Of a DNA stretch of 64,000 bases, positions 1 through 31,617 are shown piece after piece. The stretch spans positions 280,084-344,083 of the IMG/VR virus record IMGVR_UViG_3300042308_001511; one strand, given 5' to 3'. Position 1 is the stretch's first letter; the number at the start of each line of letters is the position of its first letter. The notes under the pieces are model-generated. The model saw only the letters and a list, made by a program, of their open reading frames with translations. It searched no databases and was not told the DNA's origin. The translations under genes and the position numbers were made by a program.

Positions 1-2
1 TC

Positions 3-206
3 GACCTATACAACATCATCCAGAACGAGGACATCACCAAAGCCGAAGGAGCCAACCTAAAGAGCTTATTCGAGACCGAGTTGAGAGTGATGCAGGAAGT
101 GAGCGTACACCTACGCAGTGTACGTTTCGACCCATCGAGTGAAGAAGGAATGGAGCTGCAGCTTGGCCTTTGCCAAAAAGTGTTGAACGGCGAGTCATTG
201 TCATAA
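3..206 (+). CDS. partial hypothetical protein (5' end outside window)
   Basis: Open frame DLYNIIQNED...ESLS* from position 3 to TAA 204-206, followed by ORF at 217. Confidence 0.6.
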   Translation, partial: DLYNIIQNEDITKAEGANLKSLFETELRVMQEVSVHLRSVRFDPSSEEGMELQLGLCQKVLNGESLS

Positions 207-216
207 ATCTACTAAA

Positions 217-735
217 ATGAAATACTTCTCAGATTTCCAGACCGGAAAGACATACAACTACAAAACGCTCTCATTGGACGGCACCAAGACCGTTCGCGAG
301 ACTAACACCAAATACCTTTTCTCCTTCTACACAAGCAACGGAAACGAGATCGACCTTCACTTCTTCCCGAACGATAACTTCTCGGCACCTGAGGGATCCA
401 CGTTCGACGAGAAGAAAAAGAGGAAGTTGAACGACTCCAGGTGCAGGTACATACTGTGTGAGGTCGAGACAATAGTATACGACGTCGAAGGAAACGAGCA
501 CGGACGTGATACGAAGTTCGAGGTGTACGATAAGTCTACGGACAAGCAAACCTTCGCACGTGGAAAGAAAGCTCGTTACAACAAGGATTTCGCACCTTTC
601 ACGAGGTTCTTCAACATCGAGCTGAAGGGCGGGAAGATGGTCTTGGCACCGGGCGGTGTCCACTACGGCGTGGTGCCAGGCACGTTGAAGCACGGAGTGG
701 AGGTGAAGGCGGTTGACTCATTAACAATAGTATAG
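217..735 (+). CDS. hypothetical protein
   Basis: 172-aa ORF in co-directional run. Confidence 0.75.
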   Translation: MKYFSDFQTGKTYNYKTLSLDGTKTVRETNTKYLFSFYTSNGNEIDLHFFPNDNFSAPEGSTFDEKKKRKLNDSRCRYILCEVETIVYDVEGNEHGRDTKFEVYDKSTDKQTFARGKKARYNKDFAPFTRFFNIELKGGKMVLAPGGVHYGVVPGTLKHGVEVKAVDSLTIV

Positions 736-737
736 AA

Positions 738-932
738 ATGGACGGGTTGAGAATCATCGACAACAACACCGGGAACAAGTGGGTCATCAGATCAACGGGC
801 AGAGGGCAGTTCCATCTGTCCAGGATCTATTCCAGCAAGAAGAACAAGAGAAGGCAGCAGTCGGAGCTGGTCTTCTCGGAATCTGAATGTCAAAAGTACA
901 TTAGTAATGGCAATTGGTCAAGCATCGTCTAA
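738..932 (+). CDS. hypothetical protein
   Basis: 64-aa ORF 2 nt after upstream stop. Confidence 0.65.
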   Translation: MDGLRIIDNNTGNKWVIRSTGRGQFHLSRIYSSKKNKRRQQSELVFSESECQKYISNGNWSSIV

Positions 933-975
933 ATAGACGATAATACGTTTTATCGTTTATTTAGACGATTATCTT

Positions 976-1218
976 TCACGATATAGATATGTTTACGCAC
1001 CATTTGACTCTGTGCTGCACGACACCGTTTTCGTTCAGGAAAGTCTCTCTGCGCAGGAAGCCATACAGATCCTTCTGGTCCACGATGACTCTTTCTCTGC
1101 CGTGCAGGCGCTGTAGCCTGAGAATCTCCTCATAGACCTCATCGATTGAGTTCGCTTCTATTTTTCGTGTCATAGATATGTTTTTTGACAAATATAAGGA
1201 ATATATTCTAATGAACAA
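976..1218 (-). CDS. hypothetical protein
   Basis: 80-aa ORF convergent on 738..932. Confidence 0.55.
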   Translation of the reverse strand: MFIRIYSLYLSKNISMTRKIEANSIDEVYEEILRLQRLHGRERVIVDQKDLYGFLRRETFLNENGVVQHRVKWCVNISIS

Positions 1219-1348
1219 AGGACGACTTTATTTTTTTATAAAGCAGGTTGGAGTCTACTCTTCCTGCACTGATGTTGTGCAACGCCCCTTTCCCGGCTTT
1301 CCCAGTGAGTCGATATGTCTTAGCTATGGTCCCATCGTTTCTTTTCAT
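1208..1348 (-). CDS. small hypothetical protein
   Basis: MKRNDG... start chosen because the longer start lies in a hairpin. Confidence 0.4.
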   Translation of the reverse strand: MKRNDGTIAKTYRLTGKAGKGALHNISAGRVDSNLLYKKIKSSFVH

Positions 1349-1380
1349 AAATATAAGGATCTTTCCTGGATTAAACAAAG

Positions 1381-1415
1381 AAAGGTGCCAAAAATACACG
1401 TTTTTTGGCACCTTT
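1381..1415. terminator. hairpin AAAGGTGCCAAAAA-N-TTTTTGGCACCTTT, likely intrinsic terminator
   Basis: Inverted repeat just downstream of 1433..2722; related copy at 5728-5758. Confidence 0.7.
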
Positions 1416-1432
1416 CTATAATCTGTATCAGA

Positions 1433-2722
1433 TTAGTTTTTTATGGCTTTCAGTGATATTGTTTGTCTGTCCTTTGTTATGTTCAGAAAATAAGTCCCTG
1501 GTTGCAGCATCTGTGTATCGATTGAGATTGTGCCTCCGTCGAATACCTGGATTGTTTTCCCTTCGATGGTTGTAAATGTACCGTATGATCCAGGTGTCAA
1601 GCTAATCTCTATCCTATCGTTGAAAGGGTTCGGCCAGAACAACTCTTTAAGTTGTTGTTCACGTAAAGATAAGCTAGATGAGTCTTTTAGTCCTGTATTG
1701 TCCCACAAACACTTCACCGAGTCGAACTGGTAGACGTAGATAGTGTCTGTAGGCTGTACCGGTTTTGTGCCTTTGTTCTCCCATACGAGTGTTTTGATGT
1801 TGAACTGGTGGTTGTCCCAACAGGTTGTATCTGCAGGCCTGGTCGGTATTGCTCTTACAGAGTCCAGCCAGAAATATCCTGCGTACGGGTGGTACATCTG
1901 ACATACGGGAGTATTATCGTTACAATCAGATAGGAACTTACCAGATACTATAATACTATCGAGGTGAACGATTCCTGCGACCTGTGCTGCTGCGTAGTTA
2001 CAGATCTTATACTGAGTGTTGTCGTAGCTGATATAGTAGCCTGAGCAGTCTGTAAAGCCGAGTGCTACGTAGTTGGTGATTGGTCCTGGTTCTGTACCTG
2101 GTACAATCATTATAGGAACACCGGTTGGTTTGTATTCTTTGTTATTGGTTCCAACAACGGAACAACCGTTAGCGTCGGTGAATACGACGTATAGTTTAGG
2201 ATTGTATAGGTTCATAAAGCAACCACCTTGGTTTGGACCGTAGTATTGGGTGAATGTGTTGTCCCAGTTCTTTGTGTATACTTTATCAATCATAGCATAG
2301 TTAGCTTTATCGACTGAAAAGTAAATACAGGTTTGTTGGTTTTGAGGGTTCTGTGGATCTGGCATCTGTATAACATTGAAGGAAGTGACCTTCAGTGAGT
2401 CACAGTCTTTAGTGACAGCGATAGAGATGTTTATTAGTGTGTCCAACGAGAATTTGGCTAAGCCGTCATCTTTCTTCTTACCGAGTACCCAGTAGGTGCC
2501 TGGTACGAGTTCGCCTTTTGTTTTAAAGTTTGTGGCCAGTTCGGATCCCTGTATTGCAGCGTCTACGACTCTATAGATTGACCACTTTTTAATGTTTGTT
2601 CCTGTGGTGTCGACTGATACGGCACCATCATTGAAGTTTGGTCCAGTAGCGTTTGTGACCTTTACTTGTGAGTTTGCTAGGAATGCTAGCATAAATGAGA
2701 TTGTAGCTATTAGTTTTTTCAT
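1433..2722 (-). CDS. secreted protein with type IX secretion (Por) C-terminal sorting domain
   Basis: N-terminal signal peptide MKKLIATISFMLAFLANSQ; C-terminus WPNPF...TTIEGK...IDTQMLQPGTYFLNI...LKAIKN fits type-A T9SS CTD pattern. Confidence 0.8.
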   Translation of the reverse strand: MKKLIATISFMLAFLANSQVKVTNATGPNFNDGAVSVDTTGTNIKKWSIYRVVDAAIQGSELATNFKTKGELVPGTYWVLGKKKDDGLAKFSLDTLINISIAVTKDCDSLKVTSFNVIQMPDPQNPQNQQTCIYFSVDKANYAMIDKVYTKNWDNTFTQYYGPNQGGCFMNLYNPKLYVVFTDANGCSVVGTNNKEYKPTGVPIMIVPGTEPGPITNYVALGFTDCSGYYISYDNTQYKICNYAAAQVAGIVHLDSIIVSGKFLSDCNDNTPVCQMYHPYAGYFWLDSVRAIPTRPADTTCWDNHQFNIKTLVWENKGTKPVQPTDTIYVYQFDSVKCLWDNTGLKDSSSLSLREQQLKELFWPNPFNDRIEISLTPGSYGTFTTIEGKTIQVFDGGTISIDTQMLQPGTYFLNITKDRQTISLKAIKN

Positions 2723-2730
2723 ATTATTTT

Positions 2731-2764
2731 TTATACGAAAATAAATAAAAGATTTGATATGGTG
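2731..2764 (-). repeat. near-identical intergenic promoter repeat (second copy about 4511-4545)
   Basis: TATAC[GA]AAAATAAATAAAAGATTTGATATGGTG at both sites; minus strand reads TATTTT[CT]G (TAnnTTyG). Confidence 0.7.
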
Positions 2765-2765
2765 T

Positions 2766-2799
2766 AAAAAAAAACCGTTCTGTTTTGAACGGGTTTTTT
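2766..2799. terminator. intrinsic terminator
   Basis: AAAAAACCGTTC-loop-GAACGGGTTTTTT downstream of 2813..3157. Confidence 0.65.
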
Positions 2800-2812
2800 A
2801 TAATGTGAAAAA

Positions 2813-3157
2813 CTATGGTCTGTTTTGGTTCTGTTGTTGCTGAGGTTGTGGACAGATGACGTTCATAGTGGCGCCGTAGACCTTTAGGCCCAACGGAGTG
2901 TCCGCACCGTGAAGTTGGTGCCACTGACCCTCTGTTTTCATACCAGGGTTCACCGCCTCACCCTGTTGTTGTGCTCTGTACTGGTCACAAAGACCGTTAG
3001 GGCCATATACCAAACCCTTAATACCCTGTTGTTGCTGTTGTTGAGTCATATTCTGTGAGAATACAAATCCTGTAAACAAAAACGACACTATAAAGGCAAT
3101 CACTTTACTTTTCTCCATCTTTTTATTATTTTTTTTATACGGCACCGAAACCAGCAC
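2813..3157 (-). CDS. Gln-rich exported protein
   Basis: Signal-like segment VIAFIVSFLFTGFVFSQ, poly-Q tracts; true start possibly 3121. Confidence 0.7.
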   Translation of the reverse strand: MLVSVPYKKNNKKMEKSKVIAFIVSFLFTGFVFSQNMTQQQQQQGIKGLVYGPNGLCDQYRAQQQGEAVNPGMKTEGQWHQLHGADTPLGLKVYGATMNVICPQPQQQQNQNRP

Positions 3158-3768
3158 CAGTTATATATTCCATTCCTAAAATCTCCCAAAAGGTACCAAA
3201 ATCTCCACCAAACCCTCGGCCAGAACCTCCAATCATTCTTCCTATCCTCAACCAAACGCTCTGACCTCATAACGTTGGCCCACTCATCGTAGTCTAAATA
3301 AGCCAACTCTGCGTCACCTATATCCCAAGACCCAGGTACCGACCAATCCTTTCCCATGTGACCTGAAAGTGCAAGAACACATACCTCCTCTAACAATGGT
3401 GAAACACCTATGTCTAATCGCTTACTAGCCCTACGAAAACGTCCAACATGCCAAGCATTGACATCTATCAGTGCCACGTAGAACTCGTAATGTACAAACG
3501 AAGAGTCGGGTATGCCATATCTACCCAGATCCAAAAGACGATCTTGTAACTGAAAGTAAGTAAGTTCGAACACAACACTACCATCACCAGAAAGACGATA
3601 ACCCAAGTCCCTATCGAAACCTGTTTCCCAGTCATGCGTGAACCAGTCGTACATCGCCTGCACCGGATCTGAATACTCCTCTACCCAATAACCCTGTGTA
3701 GGACTAAGAACACCATTTACCTTCCTAAGTGGTAATAGAACCAATAACCAGCACATCAATCGTAACAA
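3100..3768 (-). CDS. hypothetical protein
   Basis: 222-aa ORF, hydrophobic N-terminus. Confidence 0.65.
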   Translation of the reverse strand: MLRLMCWLLVLLPLRKVNGVLSPTQGYWVEEYSDPVQAMYDWFTHDWETGFDRDLGYRLSGDGSVVFELTYFQLQDRLLDLGRYGIPDSSFVHYEFYVALIDVNAWHVGRFRRASKRLDIGVSPLLEEVCVLALSGHMGKDWSVPGSWDIGDAELAYLDYDEWANVMRSERLVEDRKNDWRFWPRVWWRFWYLLGDFRNGIYNWCWFRCRIKKIIKRWRKVK

Positions 3769-4112
3769 ATATGACCCTCCAAAGTACCAACACCGTAGAC
3801 GTGTCCTTGTACGTAAACCGTGTAGGTACCTGGTGGAATCTTAAATACACCATGTTCGAAAACTTGACTATAGTAATCACCAAACATAGTTATACCTGAA
3901 ATCTTAACTCCAGTCGCCTGACCATCACCATACTTCATAAACCTGACAGATATCCGTCCAGTCTTAGTCGTGAACGTACCGTTAGTCTGAGTTATGTTGG
4001 GTGTCGATTGCCAAGAAGACCTACGTCCCTGTGTGAAAATTGAACTGCACATCTCACATGAGAAACACCAAACAGAAAATAACAAAAAAACCAATGAAAC
4101 TAATATCCTCAT
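3756..4112 (-). CDS. putative exported protein
   Basis: Signal-peptide-like N-terminus, 118 aa. Confidence 0.7.
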   Translation of the reverse strand: MRILVSLVFLLFSVWCFSCEMCSSIFTQGRRSSWQSTPNITQTNGTFTTKTGRISVRFMKYGDGQATGVKISGITMFGDYYSQVFEHGVFKIPPGTYTVYVQGHVYGVGTLEGHICYD

Positions 4113-4122
4113 AATATGATAT

Positions 4123-4491
4123 TTACTTACCCAGTATTTCTTTGTCAGTTGCTGACATAGATGTAACTACCATCGATAAGCCGGTGGCCATTACTGAGGC
4201 CCATTCAGGAAGTTTGAATATGACACAGATTATGCCTAATATGATGTAAATTAATATACCTATCAGTATTCCTTTACCTAAACTTTTCCAGGTCGGTGGA
4301 ACCTCATCTTCGTCTGCTACTGTAAGTGCCATTATGCCGGAACACACCGTTGCTATTGTTAGTAATAGATAGTATCCACCTGACCAGGTTCCACCGACCC
4401 ACCAGTTTAGTAACAGGTAGTAAAGTGTACCTGTAGCGAGTGTGGTTCCGAGTGCTTTGATGATTCTTGAGATAATTAATGGTAAGTTCAT
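4123..4491 (-). CDS. membrane protein (about 4 TM)
   Basis: Four hydrophobic stretches. Confidence 0.75.
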   Translation of the reverse strand: MNLPLIISRIIKALGTTLATGTLYYLLLNWWVGGTWSGGYYLLLTIATVCSGIMALTVADEDEVPPTWKSLGKGILIGILIYIILGIICVIFKLPEWASVMATGLSMVVTSMSATDKEILGK

Positions 4492-4553
4492 AATAAAAAA
4501 TATTTTTGTTTTTATACAAAAATAAATAAAAGATTTGATATGGTGCTAAAAAA

Positions 4554-4562
4554 TAATATATA
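4554..4562 (+). promoter_or_regulatory. putative late promoter TAATATATA
   Basis: Same 9-mer upstream of genes at 5797, 7295(-), 7378, 12621, 18562, 27086, 30945, 61772(-). Confidence 0.65.
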
Positions 4563-4579
4563 CAAAAAAGAAGATATTT

Positions 4580-5461
4580 ATGAAGTACATAAAGACTTAC
4601 GAAGTGCTGAAGGAGGCCAAGCTTCCCAGAAGGAGGTTCATACTACTGTCAGGCCCCAGCGCCTCTGGTAAGTCAACACTGGCAAAGAACCTAGGTGCCA
4701 CTCACTGGTACGATAAGATGTCCCAGGCGGTACTGATTGGCACCGACGACTTTATGAATAGAAAGGCCTTCGGGGTTATGAAAAGTCTTTGTAAGGCTGC
4801 GGGAATGCCTTTACTGGCCGCTATGATGAAGGACTGGCCGCACGTATTCGACCAATACAAAAAAGACTTCACAAAGTGGCGCAAGACGGCATCAACCGAG
4901 GAGCAGTCAATCTTCGACGACCTACATAAGAGGTTCCCTATCGATAAGGCGAAGGACAACGCTCCACACTTCCACCAAGACGGAAGGATCACAGGGATGG
5001 CCTGGTGTGCTGCACTTCTACCTAAGGAGTGTAAGACCATATTGTTCGACGACATATCTGTTGGTATAAAGAAGTACTTCGATGTTGATGAGTGGATCCT
5101 GTTCACACCATTTGACTGGTTGCTTAAGAACATAACCGACAGGAACTCAGATAAGGATAAGAGTGTTCATATAGACGTGAACTCGGAGGGTACCGCTATA
5201 TACCAGTACTGCCAATGGTGGCAGGCGTCTGCTGAGGCGGATCTCGACAACAAGATGTACACGGCGGATTCTGTTAGGACGATGCTGTCTGCGGCAGGTC
5301 ATAATGATCCAGATGAGGTTCTTTCGCTACTGGGTGTTAAGGGTCTTGATAACGGGTTCTATCTTACGACCAGGGACTGGATCGACGCGGGTTCGAGGAT
5401 TGTGAACACCAGGGATGTTTCTACCGGTAGGGCCGGGGATTTGCCGGGTGGCTTAAAATAA
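4580..5461 (+). CDS. P-loop nucleotide/small-molecule kinase-like protein with N-terminal MKYIKTYE tag
   Basis: Walker A GPSASGKS, IGTDD and ILFDD motifs. Confidence 0.7.
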   Translation: MKYIKTYEVLKEAKLPRRRFILLSGPSASGKSTLAKNLGATHWYDKMSQAVLIGTDDFMNRKAFGVMKSLCKAAGMPLLAAMMKDWPHVFDQYKKDFTKWRKTASTEEQSIFDDLHKRFPIDKAKDNAPHFHQDGRITGMAWCAALLPKECKTILFDDISVGIKKYFDVDEWILFTPFDWLLKNITDRNSDKDKSVHIDVNSEGTAIYQYCQWWQASAEADLDNKMYTADSVRTMLSAAGHNDPDEVLSLLGVKGLDNGFYLTTRDWIDAGSRIVNTRDVSTGRAGDLPGGLK

Positions 5462-5478
5462 CATGGACTTTATGAAAC

Positions 5479-5684
5479 TTACATTCCCAATTCCTTAAGT
5501 TTATCTTCTCTGAGCTCTTCTACGGTTCTGAAGTTTTTCCGATCCAGATAAGACCATCTATCACTATCATTTTTGACTAAAATCAAATCCGGAGACATTC
5601 CATAGTCGTTTGCATCGTACCACTTGCCGACGTGACTGACAGGCGTTCTAATATTGATTGATTACTTACACAAATGACCTTCAT
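5479..5684 (-). pseudogene. frameshifted family-B small protein with C-tag
   Basis: MKVICVSNQSILERLSVT in one frame continues as VGKWYDAND...REDKLKELGM* in another; 206 nt, one base short. Confidence 0.75.
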
Positions 5685-5706
5685 ACTATTGTTATTCTCA
5701 TAGGAA

Positions 5707-5738
5707 CAAATATAGCGATTAAAAAGAAAGGTGCCAAA
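5707..5738 (-). promoter_or_regulatory. Bacteroidota-type housekeeping promoter (-33 TTTG, 20 nt, -7 TATATTTG)
   Basis: Minus strand TTTG-gcacctttctttttaatcgc-TATATTTG, 23 nt before ATG 5684. Confidence 0.75.
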
Positions 5739-5782
5739 AAATACGAGTTTTTTGGCAACTCATCATACTGGGTTCCGGTAAA

Positions 5783-5791
5783 TAATATATA
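5783..5791 (+). promoter_or_regulatory. putative late promoter TAATATATA
   Basis: 5 nt before ATG 5797. Confidence 0.65.
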
Positions 5792-5796
5792 CCCTT

Positions 5797-6441
5797 ATGA
5801 GACTACTGAAGACATTCGAGGGATTCCACCTGGACGAGACAACACAGTTGATAACACACCTCTGCGAGGAACTGGGAGTTGACATAACATCCAGTGAAGA
5901 GATTGAGAGTGCGACAATATACACAACCGACTATTCTGAGTTGTCCGAACTAGAGATTGCTACGATACTAGAAGACCACATACCTATGCTGGGTGAGGGT
6001 AAAAGGATCGCGATGGCAATCGACCGGCTTAAGCCGATGAGGATATTCGTCTACGAGGGTAACCTGATTGATGTGATATTCTCCTACCTAGACTCAAGGC
6101 TCGGTGACATGGAGGTTGAGACCAACAAGAACAGGTGGGGTGAAGACACAATCGTGTACACAAAGGGTGGTTCGTGGTACTTCTGGCACTTCAAAGACGA
6201 CAGTGAGCTGAAGATATCCTACCAGAACGAGAACATACTCAACGAGATTGGATTGAAGAGCAAGCTAATAATGCCCAAAGTGGATCTCGAAGGGTTCATC
6301 GATTACATATCTGGGAACCACTACGAGCGGGGTGAGAAGATTACCGCGAACATATCGGCGGGATCCGTGAAACGTATGAACGTGGTGCATGAGTGGTTCT
6401 CCTCCAGGTTCGAGAAGTTCGACTACGTGGACTTCGTATAA
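5797..6441 (+). CDS. acidic hypothetical protein with N-tag (MRLLKTFEGF)
   Basis: 214-aa ORF; N-terminal motif plus late box. Confidence 0.8.
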   Translation: MRLLKTFEGFHLDETTQLITHLCEELGVDITSSEEIESATIYTTDYSELSELEIATILEDHIPMLGEGKRIAMAIDRLKPMRIFVYEGNLIDVIFSYLDSRLGDMEVETNKNRWGEDTIVYTKGGSWYFWHFKDDSELKISYQNENILNEIGLKSKLIMPKVDLEGFIDYISGNHYERGEKITANISAGSVKRMNVVHEWFSSRFEKFDYVDFV

Positions 6442-6444
6442 GTT

Positions 6445-6699
6445 TTATAGACCAAGTTCCTTTAGCTTCATCTCGCGCCACTCTTCCTTTGAGACGAATC
6501 TCGACCTTAGATACTCGGTGTTGTGACCGAAGTTGTTGATGATCTCGACGAACTCGTCGAACAGGTTTTCTGCATAGTTTACTACCTCGTACTCCTTTCC
6601 GTAGGTCAAGCCCCCAGGGATATGGCCTCTGGATTTGTATCCTCTTTTTGTTGATTCGTTGTTGTCGTAAGGTTCTATACAGACGATTTTTTCACACAT
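6445..6699 (-). CDS. family-B small protein with C-tag
   Basis: VCI...LTYGKEYEV...REMKLKELGL. Confidence 0.85.
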   Translation of the reverse strand: MCEKIVCIEPYDNNESTKRGYKSRGHIPGGLTYGKEYEVVNYAENLFDEFVEIINNFGHNTEYLRSRFVSKEEWREMKLKELGL

Positions 6700-6726
6700 G
6701 CCGTAAATATACGATAAAGTATTAAA

Positions 6727-6753
6727 GAAAAAAGCACCTAAGGTGCCTTTTTT
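6727..6753. terminator. intrinsic terminator
   Basis: AAAAAAGCACC-TAA-GGTGCCTTTTT at end of 6753..7295. Confidence 0.65.
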
Positions 6754-7295
6754 TATCTCATTGATAGGACGAATACTATGTACTCTAATATCAAATCTTT
6801 CCTCCTGTGCTTGTACTCCCAGACGTCCTCCCCGGACTCTAACTCGTCATCTTCGTTAGTGAACTCGTCGAAGAAGGTGTCCGCGAAGTCCTCCTCCTCT
6901 GCGTCAGGATTAGAGGTGCCAAGTTCGTCTTTCAGAATATCCAAGCAGTCCCATAGTTCATCCTGATCGAGCATCTCGAGAAGTTCATCCTCGTCGTAGA
7001 AAATCACATATATCCTGTCGCTGGTACCGCCACCCTGTCCTACGGCGTAGTTCCAACCCTCGTCTTCGAGCATAGGTTTGAACCTGGTCTTAGTGTCTTT
7101 GTCAATGAACGGATTTTGACCATAAGGACCATAAGATGGTTTGTCTGCGTAGGACCATATACGAAACACGTTGTCTTTGGCGAGATTTATCCTCTCGGCA
7201 TCTTTGTCTTCCAGCATCGCAGTGGCTATCTGGTTGACCTGGTCCATTTTGTTATCCTGTCCGAACTCCTCGAACATCATCAGTCTTCTTCTCAT
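6753..7295 (-). CDS. acidic hypothetical protein with N-tag (MRRRLMMFEEF)
   Basis: 180 aa; TAATATATA on minus strand at 7300-7308. Confidence 0.8.
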   Translation of the reverse strand: MRRRLMMFEEFGQDNKMDQVNQIATAMLEDKDAERINLAKDNVFRIWSYADKPSYGPYGQNPFIDKDTKTRFKPMLEDEGWNYAVGQGGGTSDRIYVIFYDEDELLEMLDQDELWDCLDILKDELGTSNPDAEEEDFADTFFDEFTNEDDELESGEDVWEYKHRRKDLILEYIVFVLSMR

Positions 7296-7377
7296 GCTTT
7301 ATATATTAAAAGCATTATCCGTTTTCTTATTGTCTGTTGTGCCAGAATCCGGGAATGTTTGCGTTAATATATACTCT

Positions 7378-8172
7378 ATGAAGTACATTAGAACATACGG
7401 GATCTTCGAGTCGAAGAAGAAGGACGTGAAGGATTACATGGGCAAAGACAGGATCATACTGATAGGTCCACCTACGGTCGGAAAGTCGACCATATCCAAT
7501 GCACTCGCCAAGAGCCTGGGCCTCGAGGTCGTCTCTCTGGACAGGCTACAGGCTGAGTTCGGGTACGGAGAGGATTCCGAGCGCGAGTGCGTGGCCCACG
7601 TCCTGTCGGAGGACTACGAGGGCTTCGACAAGCCTTCGATACTCGACTTCGGTGGAGGGCACGTCTACAAGAAGGACGCTCACAAGCTGCTGAAGGGTTA
7701 CAGGAACATCTTCGTCCTTGTCCCTTCGGAGGACATTGAGTTCAGCAGGGAACTTCTGGAGAAGGGCCACGAGAGGAGGTTGCAGGTAGGTACTGACCGC
7801 GAGCTCAAGAAGGTCATGTCCGCCTACGAGAAGGGTTGGAAGGGAATGGACGAGGGCAAGGCCGAGAAGATGATTGAGTTGATAAAGAAGGTGCTGGAAG
7901 GCGGCGCTGGTAAGATAAAGGTCGAGGATCTACCGCCTAACATGAAGTCGGAGTTCACTGGCTCGTCCTTCTACAAGTCGCAGAAGCCAAAGTACTTCTG
8001 GGACGTCGAGTCAGGCTGGAGGAAGTACCAGGACCTTTTCACGAAGAGGCACGACAGGATAAACAGGTCCATAACGGACAACGTGGTTGAGGTCTACACT
8101 AAGAAGGGCGTCCGCAGGTCGAAGTCGGCCATAGTGAAGGAGATACTGGGTGGTCTGGTGAAATTCACTTAA
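7378..8172 (+). CDS. shikimate-kinase-like P-loop protein with N-tag (MKYIRTYGIFES)
   Basis: ILIGPPTVGKST, SLDRL, ILDFGGG motifs; start at 7378 after TAATATATA 7365-7373. Confidence 0.7.
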   Translation: MKYIRTYGIFESKKKDVKDYMGKDRIILIGPPTVGKSTISNALAKSLGLEVVSLDRLQAEFGYGEDSERECVAHVLSEDYEGFDKPSILDFGGGHVYKKDAHKLLKGYRNIFVLVPSEDIEFSRELLEKGHERRLQVGTDRELKKVMSAYEKGWKGMDEGKAEKMIELIKKVLEGGAGKIKVEDLPPNMKSEFTGSSFYKSQKPKYFWDVESGWRKYQDLFTKRHDRINRSITDNVVEVYTKKGVRRSKSAIVKEILGGLVKFT

Positions 8173-22390: not shown

Positions 22391-23650
22391 TTATTGTTTC
22401 TTCTTTGTCTTCTTTTTAGTTGGTATTGGCGGTAAAGATTTGAACTCTGTCAGTGTAGGCTCGAGTCCTTTCATTATCGGCCTCAGGTACGACACGTGTT
22501 CCTTTTCGTACTGTTCTATTATCCAACTTTCTTTAAACTCTTTCTCTATCTTTGTGACCAGGTCGCCGAACTCTCGGTCCAACTCTGTGAAGACTTTGAC
22601 AATCTCCGGGTTCCCCATCGTTTCTTTGTATATTTCTGGGTAATTCTGTTTGGCGTAGAGTAGGTACCATCCCGTGAATGTCCTGAACTCGTACCAAGCG
22701 AAGTAGGTCGATAGGCAGCCTTCCTCGAATATTTTCAACGACACCTTGTCACCTTTCACCTTTGCTGTCTGGTATCCTATCCAGTTAGACCGGGTTCCGT
22801 TATAGTATGCAGAGAACTCGTCCATCATTCCGTATATGCCCCACGAGTTGGCACTTACTTTCGAGTTGGCACTTACGTAGGTGCCGTACCTGAATATCTT
22901 TGATGGTGCGTCCTTTGGAACTATGGCTATGAACTCGCATGAATTGTAAGGTTTAGTGTGTCTCGCCCATAGGTCGTGGCCGGGTGTTATCATATAGCGG
23001 TGTCGAAGATCTTTGTCCCATCCCCAGTCTATCTTGTTGTAGTGATGTGTCGTCTCGTGTAGTAGCGTGTTGAGTTTATGTGGAAAACTTACACTGGTGT
23101 CACCACCGTATGGTATAGTCTTTCCATTTACCACAGAGTTGTAACATCCGGGACCGCAGTACGCACTATCTACTACTATCATATACTCTGGACACCACTT
23201 TTTGATACTGGCGATGGCTTTGTTCTTTATATACTCTTGACTTTGCTTGATGTAGAGCTCGTTGTTCTTTCTTATCCATTCTAGTCTTTCCCATTCCTTT
23301 ATGGTTGGAAACAAATTGGCTTCGTATTTCTTTATTCGTTTTGGATTGAATATTCCTTCGTAGAGATCGTTTTTCTTGTCGTCGTATCGCATGAACTTGG
23401 GAACCTTACCTTTCATAACTATTCCGAAACGTTTTATTATGTATGTGCCGGAGTCGATCTTCTCGATCGGTATTCTGACATCCTTTGGTTTGTATGGTTT
23501 TTGATAAGAGTGTGTAACAAAGGTTCCGTCGCTGTAGAACCTTATGGCTTTTATTGGTTTGTTTCCGGTTAGGTATACTTTGGAAGTGTCTGGTTGTGCC
23601 AGTGATATAAGTGGTAACAGAAGTAGTATAATGAGTTTCATATCCTTCAA
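22391..23650 (-). CDS. exported protein with HExxH zincin-like motif
   Basis: Signal peptide LIILLLLPLISLA; LLHETTHH. Confidence 0.6.
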   Translation of the reverse strand: MKDMKLIILLLLPLISLAQPDTSKVYLTGNKPIKAIRFYSDGTFVTHSYQKPYKPKDVRIPIEKIDSGTYIIKRFGIVMKGKVPKFMRYDDKKNDLYEGIFNPKRIKKYEANLFPTIKEWERLEWIRKNNELYIKQSQEYIKNKAIASIKKWCPEYMIVVDSAYCGPGCYNSVVNGKTIPYGGDTSVSFPHKLNTLLHETTHHYNKIDWGWDKDLRHRYMITPGHDLWARHTKPYNSCEFIAIVPKDAPSKIFRYGTYVSANSKVSANSWGIYGMMDEFSAYYNGTRSNWIGYQTAKVKGDKVSLKIFEEGCLSTYFAWYEFRTFTGWYLLYAKQNYPEIYKETMGNPEIVKVFTELDREFGDLVTKIEKEFKESWIIEQYEKEHVSYLRPIMKGLEPTLTEFKSLPPIPTKKKTKKKQ

Positions 23651-23663
23651 ATGTAAGGATATA

Positions 23664-24137
23664 TTAGTATTTACAGTGTATGTTTAGATAGATACCTTTC
23701 ATTTGTGCATTGATATATACAAATCGAATAAAGTAGGTTGTATTCTTTTTTATGTAGGTATATTCTTCAAATGAAGTAACCTCGCTTAAGAAGTTGGATT
23801 CATTTATATCTACTTTGACTTTTGTTCTATCTTTTGGTAAATCTTTGGCAAATTTATTTAAAACATTAGTAATAGAATCTGATGAGACATTACTTTTTAG
23901 ATCAACACCATCATAATCATTAAGATAATAAAGCCCGGTGAATCCTTTTGTTTTGACCATATCGACTATTATGTCGATTTTTTTTGAATAAAGAATGTCC
24001 AAAAGGCGGTTTTTATATTTGTTATGATTGGCAAATACTTTTGTAGGTTGCCATGTATCTGAAGCGTCTATATCTGTACTATCTGATTGTGAGTACAAAT
24101 TCAATGCTATCAATAAGAATAAAGTTAAAATTTTCAT
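23664..24137 (-). CDS. putative exported protein
   Basis: Signal peptide MKILTLFLLIALNLYSQ. Confidence 0.75.
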   Translation of the reverse strand: MKILTLFLLIALNLYSQSDSTDIDASDTWQPTKVFANHNKYKNRLLDILYSKKIDIIVDMVKTKGFTGLYYLNDYDGVDLKSNVSSDSITNVLNKFAKDLPKDRTKVKVDINESNFLSEVTSFEEYTYIKKNTTYFIRFVYINAQMKGIYLNIHCKY

Positions 24138-31155: not shown

Positions 31156-31187
31156 AAAAATACCTTCCAATTGGAAGGTATTTTTTT
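31156..31187. terminator. bidirectional intrinsic terminator
   Basis: AAAAATACCTTCC-AATT-GGAAGGTATTTTT between convergent genes. Confidence 0.85.
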
Positions 31188-31617
31188 ATTCAAATGTTAC
31201 TATTTTTCCTATAAATACACAATGTTTATTATATTTTGATTTCTCACCAGTTTCCACATTCACCACAAAAAATGCTTCTTTAGATTCTTTGGCATCGTAC
31301 ATCTCGTACTCTGTCATACCTTCAAAGTTTATTACTTCAAGATAACAATTCTTTGGAATTGCCATTCCTGATATGATTTTACCATCTGTTGATTTCACAT
31401 ATATTTTGTTTGTACTTTTTCTATACACAACGAAGAAGTCTGCACCATAACCTAATATTTGCTTATCATCATCTATTGTCTCCACAAAAAGTGTCTTACC
31501 TGTCTCAGAACTAACTATTGCGGTCTGGTAGTCGTCTAGCTCGTCTAAATATATTTCACTTTGTGCACTTACCAGTGTAGATAAGAATAGTAATGTGATT
31601 GTGATAATGTTTCTCAT
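31186..31617 (-). CDS. putative exported protein
   Basis: Signal peptide ending VSAQ. Confidence 0.75.
   Translation of the reverse strand: MRNIITITLLFLSTLVSAQSEIYLDELDDYQTAIVSSETGKTLFVETIDDDKQILGYGADFFVVYRKSTNKIYVKSTDGKIISGMAIPKNCYLEVINFEGMTEYEMYDAKESKEAFFVVNVETGEKSKYNKHCVFIGKIVTFE

What the first reader, a model, noticed from the sequence alone, without database searches (positions are those of the whole stretch)
1433..2722. Phage-encoded type IX secretion system cargo protein
Seen: Sec-type signal peptide, Cys/Thr-rich body and a C-terminal segment with the type-A T9SS CTD pattern (xPNP...G+...I....L..G.Y.L.I......K..K). Established: such CTDs route proteins through the Bacteroidota T9SS to the cell surface. 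Inference: the phage uses host T9SS to display or release a protein, perhaps for receptor masking/superinfection exclusion or adhesion. This also points to a Bacteroidota host.
Basis: partly seen in the sequence, partly recalled or inferred. Interest (0 to 1): 0.68.

Follow-up and report, generated by a model that had tools for sequence, protein, structure and literature searches.

The report
Huge-phage gene for a T9SS-exported surface protein
A 344-kb freshwater phage carries a conserved, self-contained gene for a non-enzymatic binding protein that has every sequence and fold hallmark of cargo exported by the Bacteroidota type IX secretion system, so the phage probably re-decorates its host's surface; similar phage genes were noted in 2019-2020 but none has been tested.

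Summary
Window 1433..2722 (-) is a real 429-aa gene. It encodes a Sec signal peptide that ends ANS|Q (the Bacteroidetes "Q-rule"), a 10-cysteine all-beta body, and a C-terminal type-A T9SS sorting domain. That domain passes both curated HMM cut-offs, and its model superposes best on solved CTDs.

The gene is not a mis-assembled host fragment:
- An independent river assembly bridges it and both flanks.
- About 25 orthologues sit on related phage contigs.
- dN/dS is 0.1-0.2.

The contig is a tailed huge phage whose DnaK is closest to the 630-735-kb "huge phages". Its expression signals are Bacteroidota-like (no Shine-Dalgarno, A-rich leaders, TAnnTTTG-like box).

New here, the cargo is a mosaic:
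- two Ig/FN3-like domains shared with bacterial T9SS cargo;
- a 4-Cys OB-fold domain that otherwise occurs as more than 100 clusters of unnamed ~100-aa lipoproteins;
- a variable-copy Cys/Trp stalk repeat;
- an exchangeable CTD.

It lies as a terminator-promoter-gene-terminator cassette behind four other envelope-targeted genes.

Routing by Sec then T9SS is well supported. The role (superinfection exclusion, adhesion or protease inhibition) remains inference. Phage-encoded T9SS cargo was already reported (Bellas 2020; de Jonge 2019), so this is a new member of a known kind.

The parts
1433..2722 (-). Whole gene (429 codons + TAA): phage-encoded T9SS type-A cargo protein P0001
2666..2722 (-). 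Sec/SPI signal peptide, residues 1-19, predicted cleavage ANS|Q (Q-rule)
   Evidence: sequence; conservation; heuristic census; Q-rule literature PMC5837995
2108..2665 (-). D1-D2, residues 20-205: two Ig/FN3-like beta-sandwich domains. The module is shared with the N-termini of bacterial signal-peptide + CTD proteins (P0029, P0030, P0034, P0035, P0037).
   Evidence: AF2; FN3 matches at Z 7.2-7.7 for residues 17-103; HMMER E 5e-38 to 6e-14; alignment A6; bacterial context
1838..2107 (-). D3, residues 206-295: 4-Cys OB-fold domain (DC[ST]G.Y ... Y.[IV]CN ... C ... C.[ML]YH). It is homologous to more than 100 clusters of unnamed ~100-aa lipoproteins.
1688..1837 (-). Stalk, residues 296-345: Cys/Trp repeat (NCWD.YQF...W.N.G.QP) with variable copy number among orthologues, from 0 to about 6
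   Evidence: alignment A1
1637..1687 (-). Low-confidence Ser-rich linker, residues 346-362 (GLKDSSSLS...): the likely region of CTD removal
   Evidence: pLDDT below 50 at 349-356; conservation; that it is the cleavage region is inference
1436..1636 (-). Type-A T9SS C-terminal sorting domain, residues 363-429
1379..1417 (-). Intrinsic-terminator-like hairpin (16-bp stem + T tract) 16 nt after the stop codon
2728..2764 (-). 37-nt AT-rich promoter-like element directly upstream of the ATG. It is repeated at 97 % identity at 4509-4545. It contains TATTTTCG here and a perfect TAnnTTTG in the second copy. The leader is A-rich with no Shine-Dalgarno.
2775..2792 (-). Terminator-like hairpin + T9 that separates the upstream ORF from the cargo cassette
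2813..4491 (-). Upstream same-strand block of envelope-targeted small genes. It holds a 122-aa multi-TM protein (4123..4491), a 118-aa protein with a signal peptide and Cys/lipobox-like end (3756..4112), a 222-aa ORF (3100..3768), and a 101-aa Gln-rich protein whose signal peptide ends VFS|Q (2813..3118). The order is the same in relative L025.

Best explanation
The gene is an accessory ('moron'-type) cassette of a huge tailed phage that infects a freshwater Bacteroidota host.

Proposed mechanism, step by step.
1. During infection the gene is transcribed from its own Bacteroidota-style promoter-like element (inferred).
2. The product is exported by Sec and cleaved after ANS, which exposes Gln-20 for pyroglutamate formation (inferred from the Q-rule).
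3. It folds in the periplasm with up to five disulfides (inferred).
4. Its type-A CTD hands it to the host T9SS translocon (SprA/PorV) for passage across the outer membrane (sequence and fold shown, secretion inferred).
5. The CTD is removed in the Ser-rich linker. The protein is then most likely tethered by its new C-terminus, so that the variable-length Cys/Trp stalk projects the N-terminal modules outward (inferred).

The mature protein has no catalytic domain. It is a string of binding-type modules: two Ig/FN3-like domains borrowed from bacterial T9SS surface proteins, plus a disulfide-stapled OB-fold domain borrowed from small Bacteroidota lipoproteins. Its job is therefore to bind something at the cell surface.

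My ranking of the roles, given that it is T9SS cargo:
- masking or altering a surface receptor to exclude further phages, about 0.35;
- adhesion or aggregation of the infected cell, about 0.25;
- potempin-like inhibition of a secreted or surface peptidase, about 0.15;
- something else, about 0.25.
For: Architecture.
- The signal peptide has a conserved Q at +1.
- The CTD is above both curated cut-offs and sits at the extreme C-terminus.
- The CTD model matches translocon-bound and other solved CTDs at Z 8.4-10.3.
- Ten cysteines are conserved or nearly so, and none lies in the CTD.

Selection and retention of the CTD.
- dN/dS is 0.09-0.12 for the body and 0.12-0.21 for the CTD in unsaturated pairs.
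- CTDs have been exchanged between lineages but always kept. P0006 is 94 % identical in the body and 51 % in the CTD. P0017, P0020, P0021, P0022 and P0024 are 64-68 % in the body and 31-37 % in the CTD.
- The single CTD-less relative is an 83-bp deletion/frameshift.

Resident phage gene.
- Orthologues lie on contigs that share many other genes with this genome.
- An independent 9.1-kb river contig bridges 1253-5478 at about 98 % identity.
- Pattern scans found no relatives of the whole family in IMG/VR or in GTDB species representatives.

Cassette. Hairpin terminators lie on both sides, and there is a repeated promoter-like element.

Bacteroidota host.
- AGGAG occurs upstream of 1 of 493 ORFs, while A reaches 0.5 or more at -9..-17.
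- Six phage signal peptides end in [AS]Q.
- The DnaK is closest to the huge phages LR745206 and LR756501-2, and more distantly (about 52 %) to Prevotella Lak phages.

Binding modules.
- Fold matches are to Ig/FN3 chains, including the T9SS adhesin GhpA and PorZ.
- D1-D2 is shared with bacterial SP+CTD proteins.
- D3 is a confident OB-fold (pLDDT 86) nearest to Bacteroidota lipoprotein OB domains.

Precedent: PMC7468147 and PMC6949934.
Against: - There is no experimental evidence of expression, secretion, CTD cleavage or surface anchoring.
- The host is unidentified, so the presence of a T9SS in it is unverified.
- The CTD bit scores are only 1-4 bits above their cut-offs.
- Similar beta-sandwiches without a T9SS role (DUF3244, alpha-2-macroglobulin MG domains) also appear among the fold matches at Z 8-9.
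- Ig-like domains are common on phage virions.
- The full-length model is only moderate (pLDDT 67.8, pTM 0.31).
- The gene seems dispensable. One contig from an RNA library joins 1476 to 2808 without it (a single contig with short flanks), and one relative is frameshifted.
- The promoter assignment rests on a one-mismatch TAnnTTTG box.
- Nothing discriminates between the candidate roles.
Confidence: 0.75

Rival explanations
1. Potempin-like inhibitor. The protein is T9SS cargo, but its active part is the OB-fold D3. The disulfide-stapled beta4-beta5 loop (C...C.MYH) would insert into and block a secreted or surface peptidase of the host or of competitors. This would protect virions, receptors or the infected cell.
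For: - D3 matches potempin A (Foldseek 8b2m E 7e-3, TM 0.53; VIA 8b2n_B Z 7.0) and potempin D (8ehb, Z 6.5).
- Potempins are 98-132-residue OB-fold or beta-barrel outer-membrane lipoproteins that inhibit T9SS-secreted peptidases. Their functional loops lie between beta4 and beta5 (PMC9890683).
- The stand-alone D3 relatives are lipoproteins of the same size.
Against: - The D3 profile shows no sequence similarity to any PDB chain, potempins included.
- A Z of about 7 is in the range of common arrangements, and NigD-like, DUF1344 and generic OB folds score the same.
- No peptidase gene is linked. Neighbours have no Pfam peptidase hit, whereas potempin genes sit immediately upstream of their target peptidase.
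Confidence: 0.12
2. Adhesin or aggregation factor. The displayed Ig/FN3 + OB modules make the infected cell stick to particles, other cells or polysaccharide. That would change its fate, for example by keeping it in a nutrient-rich or host-rich micro-niche, rather than blocking other phages.
For: - The best global fold matches are chains of Ig/FN3 domains from adhesins (GhpA, fibronectin, Bap/BSP, a large adhesion protein).
- The D1-D2 module occurs in bacterial multi-paralogue clusters of CTD surface proteins next to a Laminin_G_3 + CTD gene.
- A legume-lectin-like gene is adjacent to the cargo gene in relatives L023, L002 and L003.
- The variable stalk length is typical of surface adhesins.
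Against: - Ig/FN3 matches are generic.
- No carbohydrate-binding or known adhesin family is detected by HMM.
- The benefit to a lytic huge phage is speculative.
Confidence: 0.2
3. Not T9SS cargo. The C-terminal domain would be just an Ig-like beta-sandwich, and the protein would stay periplasmic, be membrane-associated, or decorate the virion.
For: - The CTD HMM scores are close to threshold.
- Non-T9SS sandwiches appear among the fold hits.
- In huge phage LR756501 a PF18962-type domain lies internally rather than at the C-terminus of a 446-aa ORF. This shows that the domain can occur in non-canonical positions in phages.
Against: - The top fold hits are genuine CTDs, including ones imaged in the translocon.
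- The CTD is terminal in all intact family members.
- Three CTD flavours have been swapped in while a CTD was always kept.
- The CTD is under purifying selection.
- A signal peptide plus 10 Cys argue against a cytoplasmically assembled virion protein.
Confidence: 0.08
4. Assembly artefact: a host (Bacteroidota) gene wrongly joined into a viral contig.
For: - The modules are of bacterial type.
- Many contigs in other metagenomes break at the two intergenic flanks, 1226-1371 and 2766-2799.
Against: - An independent 9,113-bp contig from another study bridges both junctions.
- The same gene sits in phage-type neighbourhoods in L002, L003 and L023-L026.
- The gene lies 61 kb from the contig end.
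- Composition and expression signals match the rest of the genome.
- The breaks are explained by a multi-copy small ORF and by flank variability.
Confidence: 0.02

Closest known systems
T9SS CTD-tagged genes of the 76-kb cryoconite 'Cryophage' (Bellas et al. 2020, PMC7468147)
   Same: These are phage-encoded genes with type-A T9SS sorting domains in a Bacteroidota phage. They lie in flexible, variable regions. The authors proposed hijacking of the host T9SS and a possible role in superinfection exclusion.
   Different: Cryophage's cargo are an endoglucanase, a GH39 and a PA14 protein, that is, enzymes or known domains. Here the cargo is a non-enzymatic mosaic (Ig/FN3 x2 + 4-Cys OB-fold + stalk) in a 344-kb huge phage, and it forms a conserved family under purifying selection. 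There is no sequence relationship apart from the CTD.
T9SS sorting-domain ORFs next to crAss-BACON ORFs in gut phage lineages (de Jonge et al. 2019, PMC6949934)
   Same: PF18962-type domains are annotated in genomes of phages of Bacteroidota.
   Different: Those ORFs sit near head and structural modules and carry BACON repeats, and they come from a gut habitat. A signal peptide or export was not analysed.
Bacterial type-A T9SS cargo (e.g. F. johnsoniae NucA and FspA, P. gingivalis RgpB, T. forsythia mirolase)
   Same: They share the Sec signal peptide and the C-terminal ~70-residue beta-sandwich CTD. The CTD fold matches at Z 8.4-10.3 with 13-27 % identity, and HMM membership holds.
   Different: This gene is encoded by a virus. 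The cargo body is unrelated to these enzymes. Secretion is untested.
Potempins A, C and D of Tannerella forsythia (PMC9890683)
   Same: They are small disulfide-containing OB-fold modules of Bacteroidota outer-membrane lipoproteins. The fold similarity to D3 is Z 6.5-7.0.
   Different: There is no detectable sequence homology, no linked peptidase gene, and a different anchoring mode (a domain inside a CTD protein rather than a lipoprotein). Other OB lipoprotein domains (NigD-like, DUF1344, 3k0y) match equally well.
Phage superinfection-exclusion surface proteins such as T5 Llp or Cor (from general knowledge, not tested here)
   Same: These are phage-encoded, exported envelope proteins made during infection or lysogeny that block the phage's own receptor. 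This is the functional analogy proposed for the cargo.
   Different: Those are lipoproteins of Proteobacteria phages that use the Lol pathway. No homology exists, and exclusion is not shown here.

Membership tests
T9SS type-A CTD cargo (PF18962 / TIGR04183) | C-terminal sorting domain scoring above the curated HMM cut-offs | tested here: met
   PF18962 scores 30.9 against 27. TIGR04183 scores 24.3 against 23. The genome six-frame search gives 33.1 bits.
T9SS type-A CTD cargo (PF18962 / TIGR04183) | Domain located at the extreme C-terminus | tested here: met
   Residues 363-429 of 429. The same holds in all intact relatives.
T9SS type-A CTD cargo (PF18962 / TIGR04183) | [quoted passage not shown] | tested here: met
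   An n/h/c-region with A-x-S|Q is conserved in the family and is picked up by a heuristic scan. No dedicated predictor (SignalP) was available.
T9SS type-A CTD cargo (PF18962 / TIGR04183) | CTD adopts the Ig-like beta-sandwich of solved CTDs | tested here: met
   8glk_D Z 10.3 at 2.1 A over 71 residues; PorZ 10.2; mirolase CTD 9.5; PorU 9.0; RgpB 8.7; FspA 8.4.
T9SS type-A CTD cargo (PF18962 / TIGR04183) | Secretion depends on T9SS components, and the CTD is removed by PorU-type sortase | not testable with these tools
   This needs expression in wild type versus T9SS mutants. The host is unknown.
Phage 'moron' (autonomous accessory cassette) | Own terminator(s) and promoter flanking a gene not needed for the lytic core | tested here: inconclusive
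   Hairpin terminators lie on both sides. A repeated 37-nt promoter-like element carries a near-TAnnTTTG box. A gene-less junction 1476->2808 was seen in one contig only. No transcript mapping was done.
SprB repeat proteins (PF13573) | HMM match to the SprB repeat | tested here: not met
   There is no PF13573 hit at E <= 10 in P0001 or at E <= 5 in six D1-D2 relatives. The only pointer was language-model neighbours scoring 0.83-0.86, which is below the reliable range.
Potempins (Bacteroidota lipoprotein peptidase inhibitors) | Sequence or profile homology to PotA-E | tested here: not met
   The D3 profile of 129 sequences finds no potempin chain at E <= 10.
Potempins (Bacteroidota lipoprotein peptidase inhibitors) | OB-fold or beta-barrel scaffold with a functional beta4-beta5 loop | tested here: inconclusive
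   The OB-fold is confident. PotA scores Z 7.0 and Foldseek E 7e-3, but other OB lipoproteins score equally.
Potempins (Bacteroidota lipoprotein peptidase inhibitors) | Gene immediately upstream of its target peptidase gene | tested here: not met
   No peptidase family is found in the ten neighbouring ORFs.
Unnamed 4-Cys OB-fold lipoprotein domain family (D3) | Conserved C-G-Y ... C-N ... C ... C-x-x-H signature and significant profile match | tested here: met
   The hits comprise 147 proteins at E <= 1e-3, and most of them are ~100-aa proteins that match residues 214-294 only. The invariant columns are C, G, Y, C, N, C, C and H. 86 of 125 have a lipobox-like signal-peptide end. There is no Pfam or NCBIfam model.

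The most novel reading that the evidence does not exclude
Huge phages of Bacteroidota would routinely hijack the host T9SS. This family would be a dedicated, surface-anchored exclusion or shielding factor. Its OB-fold module, recruited from a large uncharacterised family of Bacteroidota lipoproteins, would bind or inhibit a specific T9SS-dependent surface component (a receptor adhesin or peptidase). The swappable CTD and the variable stalk would tune it to different host strains. That would make it the first functionally defined viral T9SS effector, and it would also assign a function to the orphan lipoprotein family.
Probability: 0.2. Interest if true: 0.72.

Novelty: new member of a known kind. 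Interest (0 to 1): 0.45.

Why it matters
No virus-encoded T9SS substrate has been tested experimentally. The idea rests on a few genomic remarks from 2019-2020.

This family is a clean test case:
- It is one gene per genome and strongly conserved.
- It has an obvious signal peptide and a modular CTD.
- It recurs in lake and river metagenomes from about nine studies.

If secretion is confirmed, it would show that huge phages re-engineer the outer surface of Bacteroidota through the phylum's own secretion and attachment pathway. That has consequences for phage-phage competition, particle attachment and carbon cycling in fresh waters.

The CTD and the Q-rule also give cheap, independent host-phylum markers for uncultured phages.

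As a by-product, the work exposes a large unnamed family of 4-Cys OB-fold lipoproteins that deserves a name and a function.

Tried and rejected
1. Isolated-phage relatives. Megablast of window 1-8000 and tblastn of P0001 against 50,697 phage records gave no match.
2. PHROGs and Pfam for the cargo body gave nothing beyond the CTD. A weak Wzt_C hit overlaps the CTD and is below its cut-off.
3. Pattern scans for the family in IMG/VR and GTDB representatives gave no confirmed relatives. Scans with the D3 alignments failed for lack of a conserved 7-10-column stretch, so the taxonomic range of the lipoprotein family could not be mapped. Only one member carries a name, 'Bacteroidia bacterium'.
4. The SprB-repeat lead, from my reading of the NDG...GTY and DANGC motifs and from Atlas features, was not confirmed by HMM.
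5. The Pfam terminase (PF17289, PF03237), sheath (PF04984) and HK97 capsid (PF05065) models are silent on this genome. Phage status therefore rests on the IMG/VR and CheckV classification, on PHROG structural, baseplate and tail-spike hits, and on gene content.
6. I first wondered whether the 632-aa phrog_22485 protein was a chimallin. It is a DnaK.
8. The D1-D2 scan of GTDB representatives found one locus only. It lies in a MAG labelled Actinomyces viscosus, which is almost certainly mis-binned. Its context is bacterial with several CTD proteins, so no host genus could be named.
9. No type-B CTD (CHU_C) was found in the genome, but the controls were silent too, so this is uninformative.
10. 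Complex prediction was not used, because the host's T9SS proteins are unknown.
Full report
OBSERVATION

The ORF at window 1433..2722 on the minus strand is real and encodes 429 residues.

Residues 1-19 form a textbook Sec signal peptide: MKK, then a 13-residue hydrophobic core, then A-N-S|Q. In an alignment of 26 family members the hydrophobic core drifts while its character is kept, and the Gln after the predicted cleavage site is nearly invariant. That is the 'Bacteroidetes Q-rule' (PMC5837995). It has already been noted in Porphyromonas phage proteins (PMC10367356).

The mature part holds ten cysteines. The first six are invariant, two more are nearly so, and none lies in the C-terminal domain.

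The C-terminal 67 residues match the type-A T9SS sorting domain on several counts:
- They pass the curated cut-offs of both PF18962 (30.9 against 27 bits) and TIGR04183 (24.3 against 23).
- A family profile finds only CTD-bearing chains in the PDB.
- The AF2 model of residues 357-429 superposes best on the NucA CTD imaged inside the T9SS translocon (8glk_D, Z 10.3, 2.1 A over 71 residues).
- The next best matches are the CTDs of PorZ, mirolase, PorU, RgpB and FspA.

CONTEXT: A PHAGE, AND NOT A MIS-ASSEMBLY

The window is the last 64 kb of a 344,083-bp IMG/VR virus record that CheckV rates 91 % complete. The gene lies 61 kb from the contig end and is the only PF18962 match in the genome.

The genome has about 495 mostly small ORFs. 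PHROG matches include:
- a baseplate wedge subunit;
- tail-spike and virion structural proteins;
- T4-type topoisomerase II;
- RNR and NAD-ligase;
- a Lon-like protease;
- at least four ~600-aa homing endonucleases.

Standard Pfam terminase, sheath and capsid models are silent, which is not unusual for very divergent huge phages. The phage's DnaK is 82, 78 and 64 % identical to those of the 635-735-kb metagenomic huge phages LR745206, LR756502 and LR756501, and about 52 % identical to Prevotella Lak phages.

The stretch occurs in lake and river metagenomes from about nine independent studies. In one of them a single 9,113-bp contig bridges window 1253-5478 at about 98 % identity, covering both junctions of the gene.

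Twenty-seven relatives were found, at 29-93 % identity in the word search, and nearly all carry PF18962. They lie on contigs that share many other genes with this genome, although the immediate neighbours differ. Pattern scans found no relatives in IMG/VR or in GTDB species representatives.

The gene is under purifying selection. dN/dS is 0.09-0.12 in the body and 0.12-0.21 in the CTD for pairs with unsaturated dS.

The host-fragment rival is therefore rejected.

HOST PHYLUM

Besides the CTD itself, four independent signals point to Bacteroidota:
- The Q-rule holds in this protein and in at least five other signal-peptide proteins of the phage.
- Shine-Dalgarno motifs are virtually absent (AGGAG upstream of 1 of 493 ORFs, with no enrichment of GGAG, GAGG or AGGA over a control window). 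At the same time there is a strong A-rich leader at -9..-17.
- Sigma-70-type promoters are depleted around the gene (3 found against 8.3 expected). A promoter-like element is present whose second copy carries a perfect TAnnTTTG box.
- The phage is akin to a huge-phage group that includes Prevotella Lak phages.

ANATOMY OF THE CARGO

The full-length AF2 model is moderate (pLDDT 67.8) and all-beta. Foldseek returns chains of Ig/FN3-like domains: the Aureispira T9SS 'grappling hook' GhpA, fibronectin, PorZ and biofilm adhesins. The Atlas neighbours are all Bacteroidota CTD proteins. No catalytic family is detected.

An exhaustive profile search with the body split it into modules.

- D1-D2 (residues 20-205) recurs at the N-terminus of other proteins that also have a Q-rule signal peptide and a CTD, but different middle domains (Ig_7, PKD). 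Two of these lie on an ordinary bacterial contig among housekeeping genes. They sit beside further CTD proteins, including a Laminin_G_3 + CTD gene.
- D3 (about residues 214-294) is homologous to more than 100 clusters of small (~100-aa) proteins with a lipobox-type signal peptide. These share an invariant C-G-Y...C-N...C...C-x-x-H signature.
  - None has a Pfam or NCBIfam model.
  - One is annotated from a Bacteroidia MAG.
  - A triple-D3 lipoprotein sits directly downstream of Wzz and Wzy_C genes in bacterial contigs.
  - Modelled with 129 sequences, D3 folds confidently (pLDDT 86, pTM 0.74) as a beta1-beta2-beta3-alpha-beta4-beta5 OB-fold.
  - Its nearest structures are OB domains of Bacteroidota lipoproteins: 3k0y, NigD-like proteins, DUF1344 and potempins A and D, at Z 6.5-7.4. 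Generic OB folds follow.
  - There is no sequence-level link to any of them.
  - Potempins are outer-membrane lipoprotein inhibitors of T9SS-secreted peptidases that act through their beta4-beta5 loops (PMC9890683). In D3 that loop carries two of the conserved cysteines and the MYH motif. This is suggestive, but it is not evidence of inhibition.
- Residues 296-345 are a Cys/Trp repeat whose copy number varies from 0 to about 6 among orthologues. That behaviour fits a spacer or stalk.
- A low-confidence Ser-rich linker (residues 346-362) precedes the CTD.

CTDs are mosaic. P0006 is 94 % identical in the body but 51 % in the CTD. Five relatives with 64-68 % body identity have a third CTD type at 31-37 %. 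A CTD is nevertheless always kept. The only CTD-less relative (P0027) is an 83-bp deletion and frameshift of an otherwise 97-100 % identical gene.

GENE LAYOUT

Reading along the coding strand, the layout is:
1. the upstream ORF;
2. a hairpin followed by a T9 tract (2792-2775);
3. a 37-nt AT-rich element (2764-2728) that is repeated at 97 % identity ahead of the 4491(-) gene;
4. an A-rich leader;
5. the gene;
6. a 16-bp-stem terminator hairpin (1417-1379).

This is the layout of an autonomous accessory cassette.

In other metagenomes many contigs break in the two flanks. One contig from an RNA library joins 1476 to 2808 with 18 unrelated letters, which is a variant without the gene. The evidence for that variant is weak: one contig, with flanks of 61 and 32 nt.

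Upstream on the same strand, in the same order in relative L025, lie four further genes:
- a multi-TM protein;
- a protein whose signal peptide ends in a lipobox-like Cys;
- a 222-aa ORF;
- a Gln-rich secreted protein whose signal peptide ends VFS|Q.

Together with the cargo gene they form a small module of envelope-directed products. Contigs of the RNA library cover parts of this block, but DNA carry-over cannot be excluded.

MECHANISM

Shown:
- the architecture;
- family membership of the CTD by sequence and by fold;
- purifying selection;
- phage residency;
- Bacteroidota-type signals.

Inferred:
- Sec export and cleavage before Gln-20, followed by pyroglutamate formation;
- disulfide formation in the periplasm;
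- CTD-dependent passage through SprA/PorV;
- CTD removal in the linker, then either release or covalent tethering.

Because the variable stalk sits between the binding modules and the CTD, I favour tethering by the new C-terminus, with the modules projecting outward.

The cargo is non-enzymatic, so it should act by binding. I rank receptor masking or superinfection exclusion first, adhesion second and potempin-like inhibition third. Nothing here discriminates between them firmly.

COMPARISON AND NOVELTY

Phage-encoded T9SS cargo is not new as a genomic observation.
- Bellas et al. 2020 reported three CTD-tagged genes in the 76-kb Cryophage. They called it a unique occurrence and already suggested hijacking of the T9SS and superinfection exclusion.
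- de Jonge et al. 2019 noted T9SS sorting-domain ORFs in gut crAss-BACON phages.

I found no paper on such genes in huge or jumbo phages and no experimental test.

In my own check, 4 of 5 related huge phages carry PF18962 ORFs. One (LR756504) is a canonical signal-peptide + CTD protein, and one (LR756501) carries the domain internally.

The finding is thus a new member of a known kind. The added value lies in four things:
- a well-defined conserved family;
- its mosaic origin from host-type envelope modules;
- the CTD swapping;
- the orphan OB-fold lipoprotein family it uncovers.

LIMITS

- No SignalP was available.
- The host genus is unknown.
- The taxonomic range of the D3 family is unmapped, because the scans failed.
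- Only Logan contigs could be laid, not raw reads, so transcription start, strand and level are unknown.
- The full-length model has uncertain domain packing.

Noticed in passing
window 2813-4491 (-): Four consecutive same-strand genes upstream of the cargo gene all look envelope-directed. They are a 122-aa multi-TM protein, a 118-aa protein whose signal peptide ends ...VWCFSC (lipobox-like), a 222-aa ORF with a hydrophobic N-terminus, and a 101-aa Gln-rich protein whose signal peptide ends VFS|Q. The order is the same in relative L025. None has a Pfam hit.
   Followed up: partly
window 2728-2764 and 4509-4545 (-): A 37-nt AT-rich element is repeated at 97 % identity in front of the cargo gene and in front of the 4491(-) block. 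The second copy holds a perfect Bacteroidota -7 box (TAnnTTTG). It is possibly a shared phage promoter class.
   Followed up: partly
window 1208-1348 (-); G000 277082-277246: A small ORF of about 46 aa lies just downstream of the cargo gene and is a paralogue of a 54-aa ORF 4 kb away. Copies also flank the gene in L024, L025, L026 and L003. Contig depth rises, and many contigs end, at 1226-1371 in other metagenomes. It is possibly a multi-copy element that promotes shuffling of neighbouring cassettes.
   Followed up: partly
window 1476 -> 2808 (junction seen in run X20): One 366-nt contig from a freshwater metatranscriptome library joins these two points with 18 unrelated letters. This is a phage variant that lacks the cargo gene. 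It is a single contig with short flanks.
   Followed up: no
G000 275806-276453 (-), outside the window (L011:15806-16453): A 215-aa legume-lectin-like protein (PF03388, 24.4 bits against a cut-off of 24). Its homologue lies next to the cargo gene in relatives L023, L002 and L003, where it is a 429-aa Laminin_G_3 protein. In a bacterial contig a Laminin_G_3 + CTD gene sits beside D1-D2 + CTD paralogues, which may be a trace of joint capture from a host.
   Followed up: partly
window 22391-23650 (-), 23664-24137 (-), 31186-31617 (-); G000 277248-278042 (-): Further phage ORFs have signal peptides that end ...LAQ, ...YSQ, ...SAQ and ...IAQ (Q-rule). They have no Pfam family. The phage appears to encode a small secretome adapted to Bacteroidota.
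   Followed up: partly
whole genome G000 (493 ORF starts): There is practically no Shine-Dalgarno signal, but A reaches 0.5 or more at positions -9 to -17 upstream of starts. Together with CTD and Q-rule proteins, this is a usable host-phylum marker for uncultured phages.
   Followed up: yes
L019 (LR756501.1 652757-655969), ORF 622..1962 (-): In the 735-kb huge phage a PF18962-type domain (43 bits) sits in the N-terminal third of a 446-aa signal-peptide protein, not at the C-terminus. A Cys/Trp-rich domain follows it. This is a non-canonical placement of the sorting domain.
   Followed up: no
L027 6163-7041 and L028 7913-8791 (bacterial contigs): A 292-aa lipoprotein made of three D3-type OB-fold repeats lies immediately downstream of Wzz-like and Wzy_C (O-antigen ligase/polymerase-like) genes in two independent assemblies. 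This hints at a link between this orphan family and surface polysaccharide.
   Followed up: no
L038/L039 (CALPVI020000039.1): A 10.6-kb contig carrying several T9SS CTD proteins with Q-rule signal peptides is filed in a MAG labelled Actinomyces viscosus. It is very likely a mis-binned Bacteroidota contig.
   Followed up: no
G000 127767-129584, 132671-134479, 189534-191453, 175667-177259 (outside window): At least four large (530-640 aa) homing or HNH endonuclease paralogues (phrog_3339, 559, 1314) are scattered in the genome. There is also a phage DnaK at 138004-139902.
   Followed up: no
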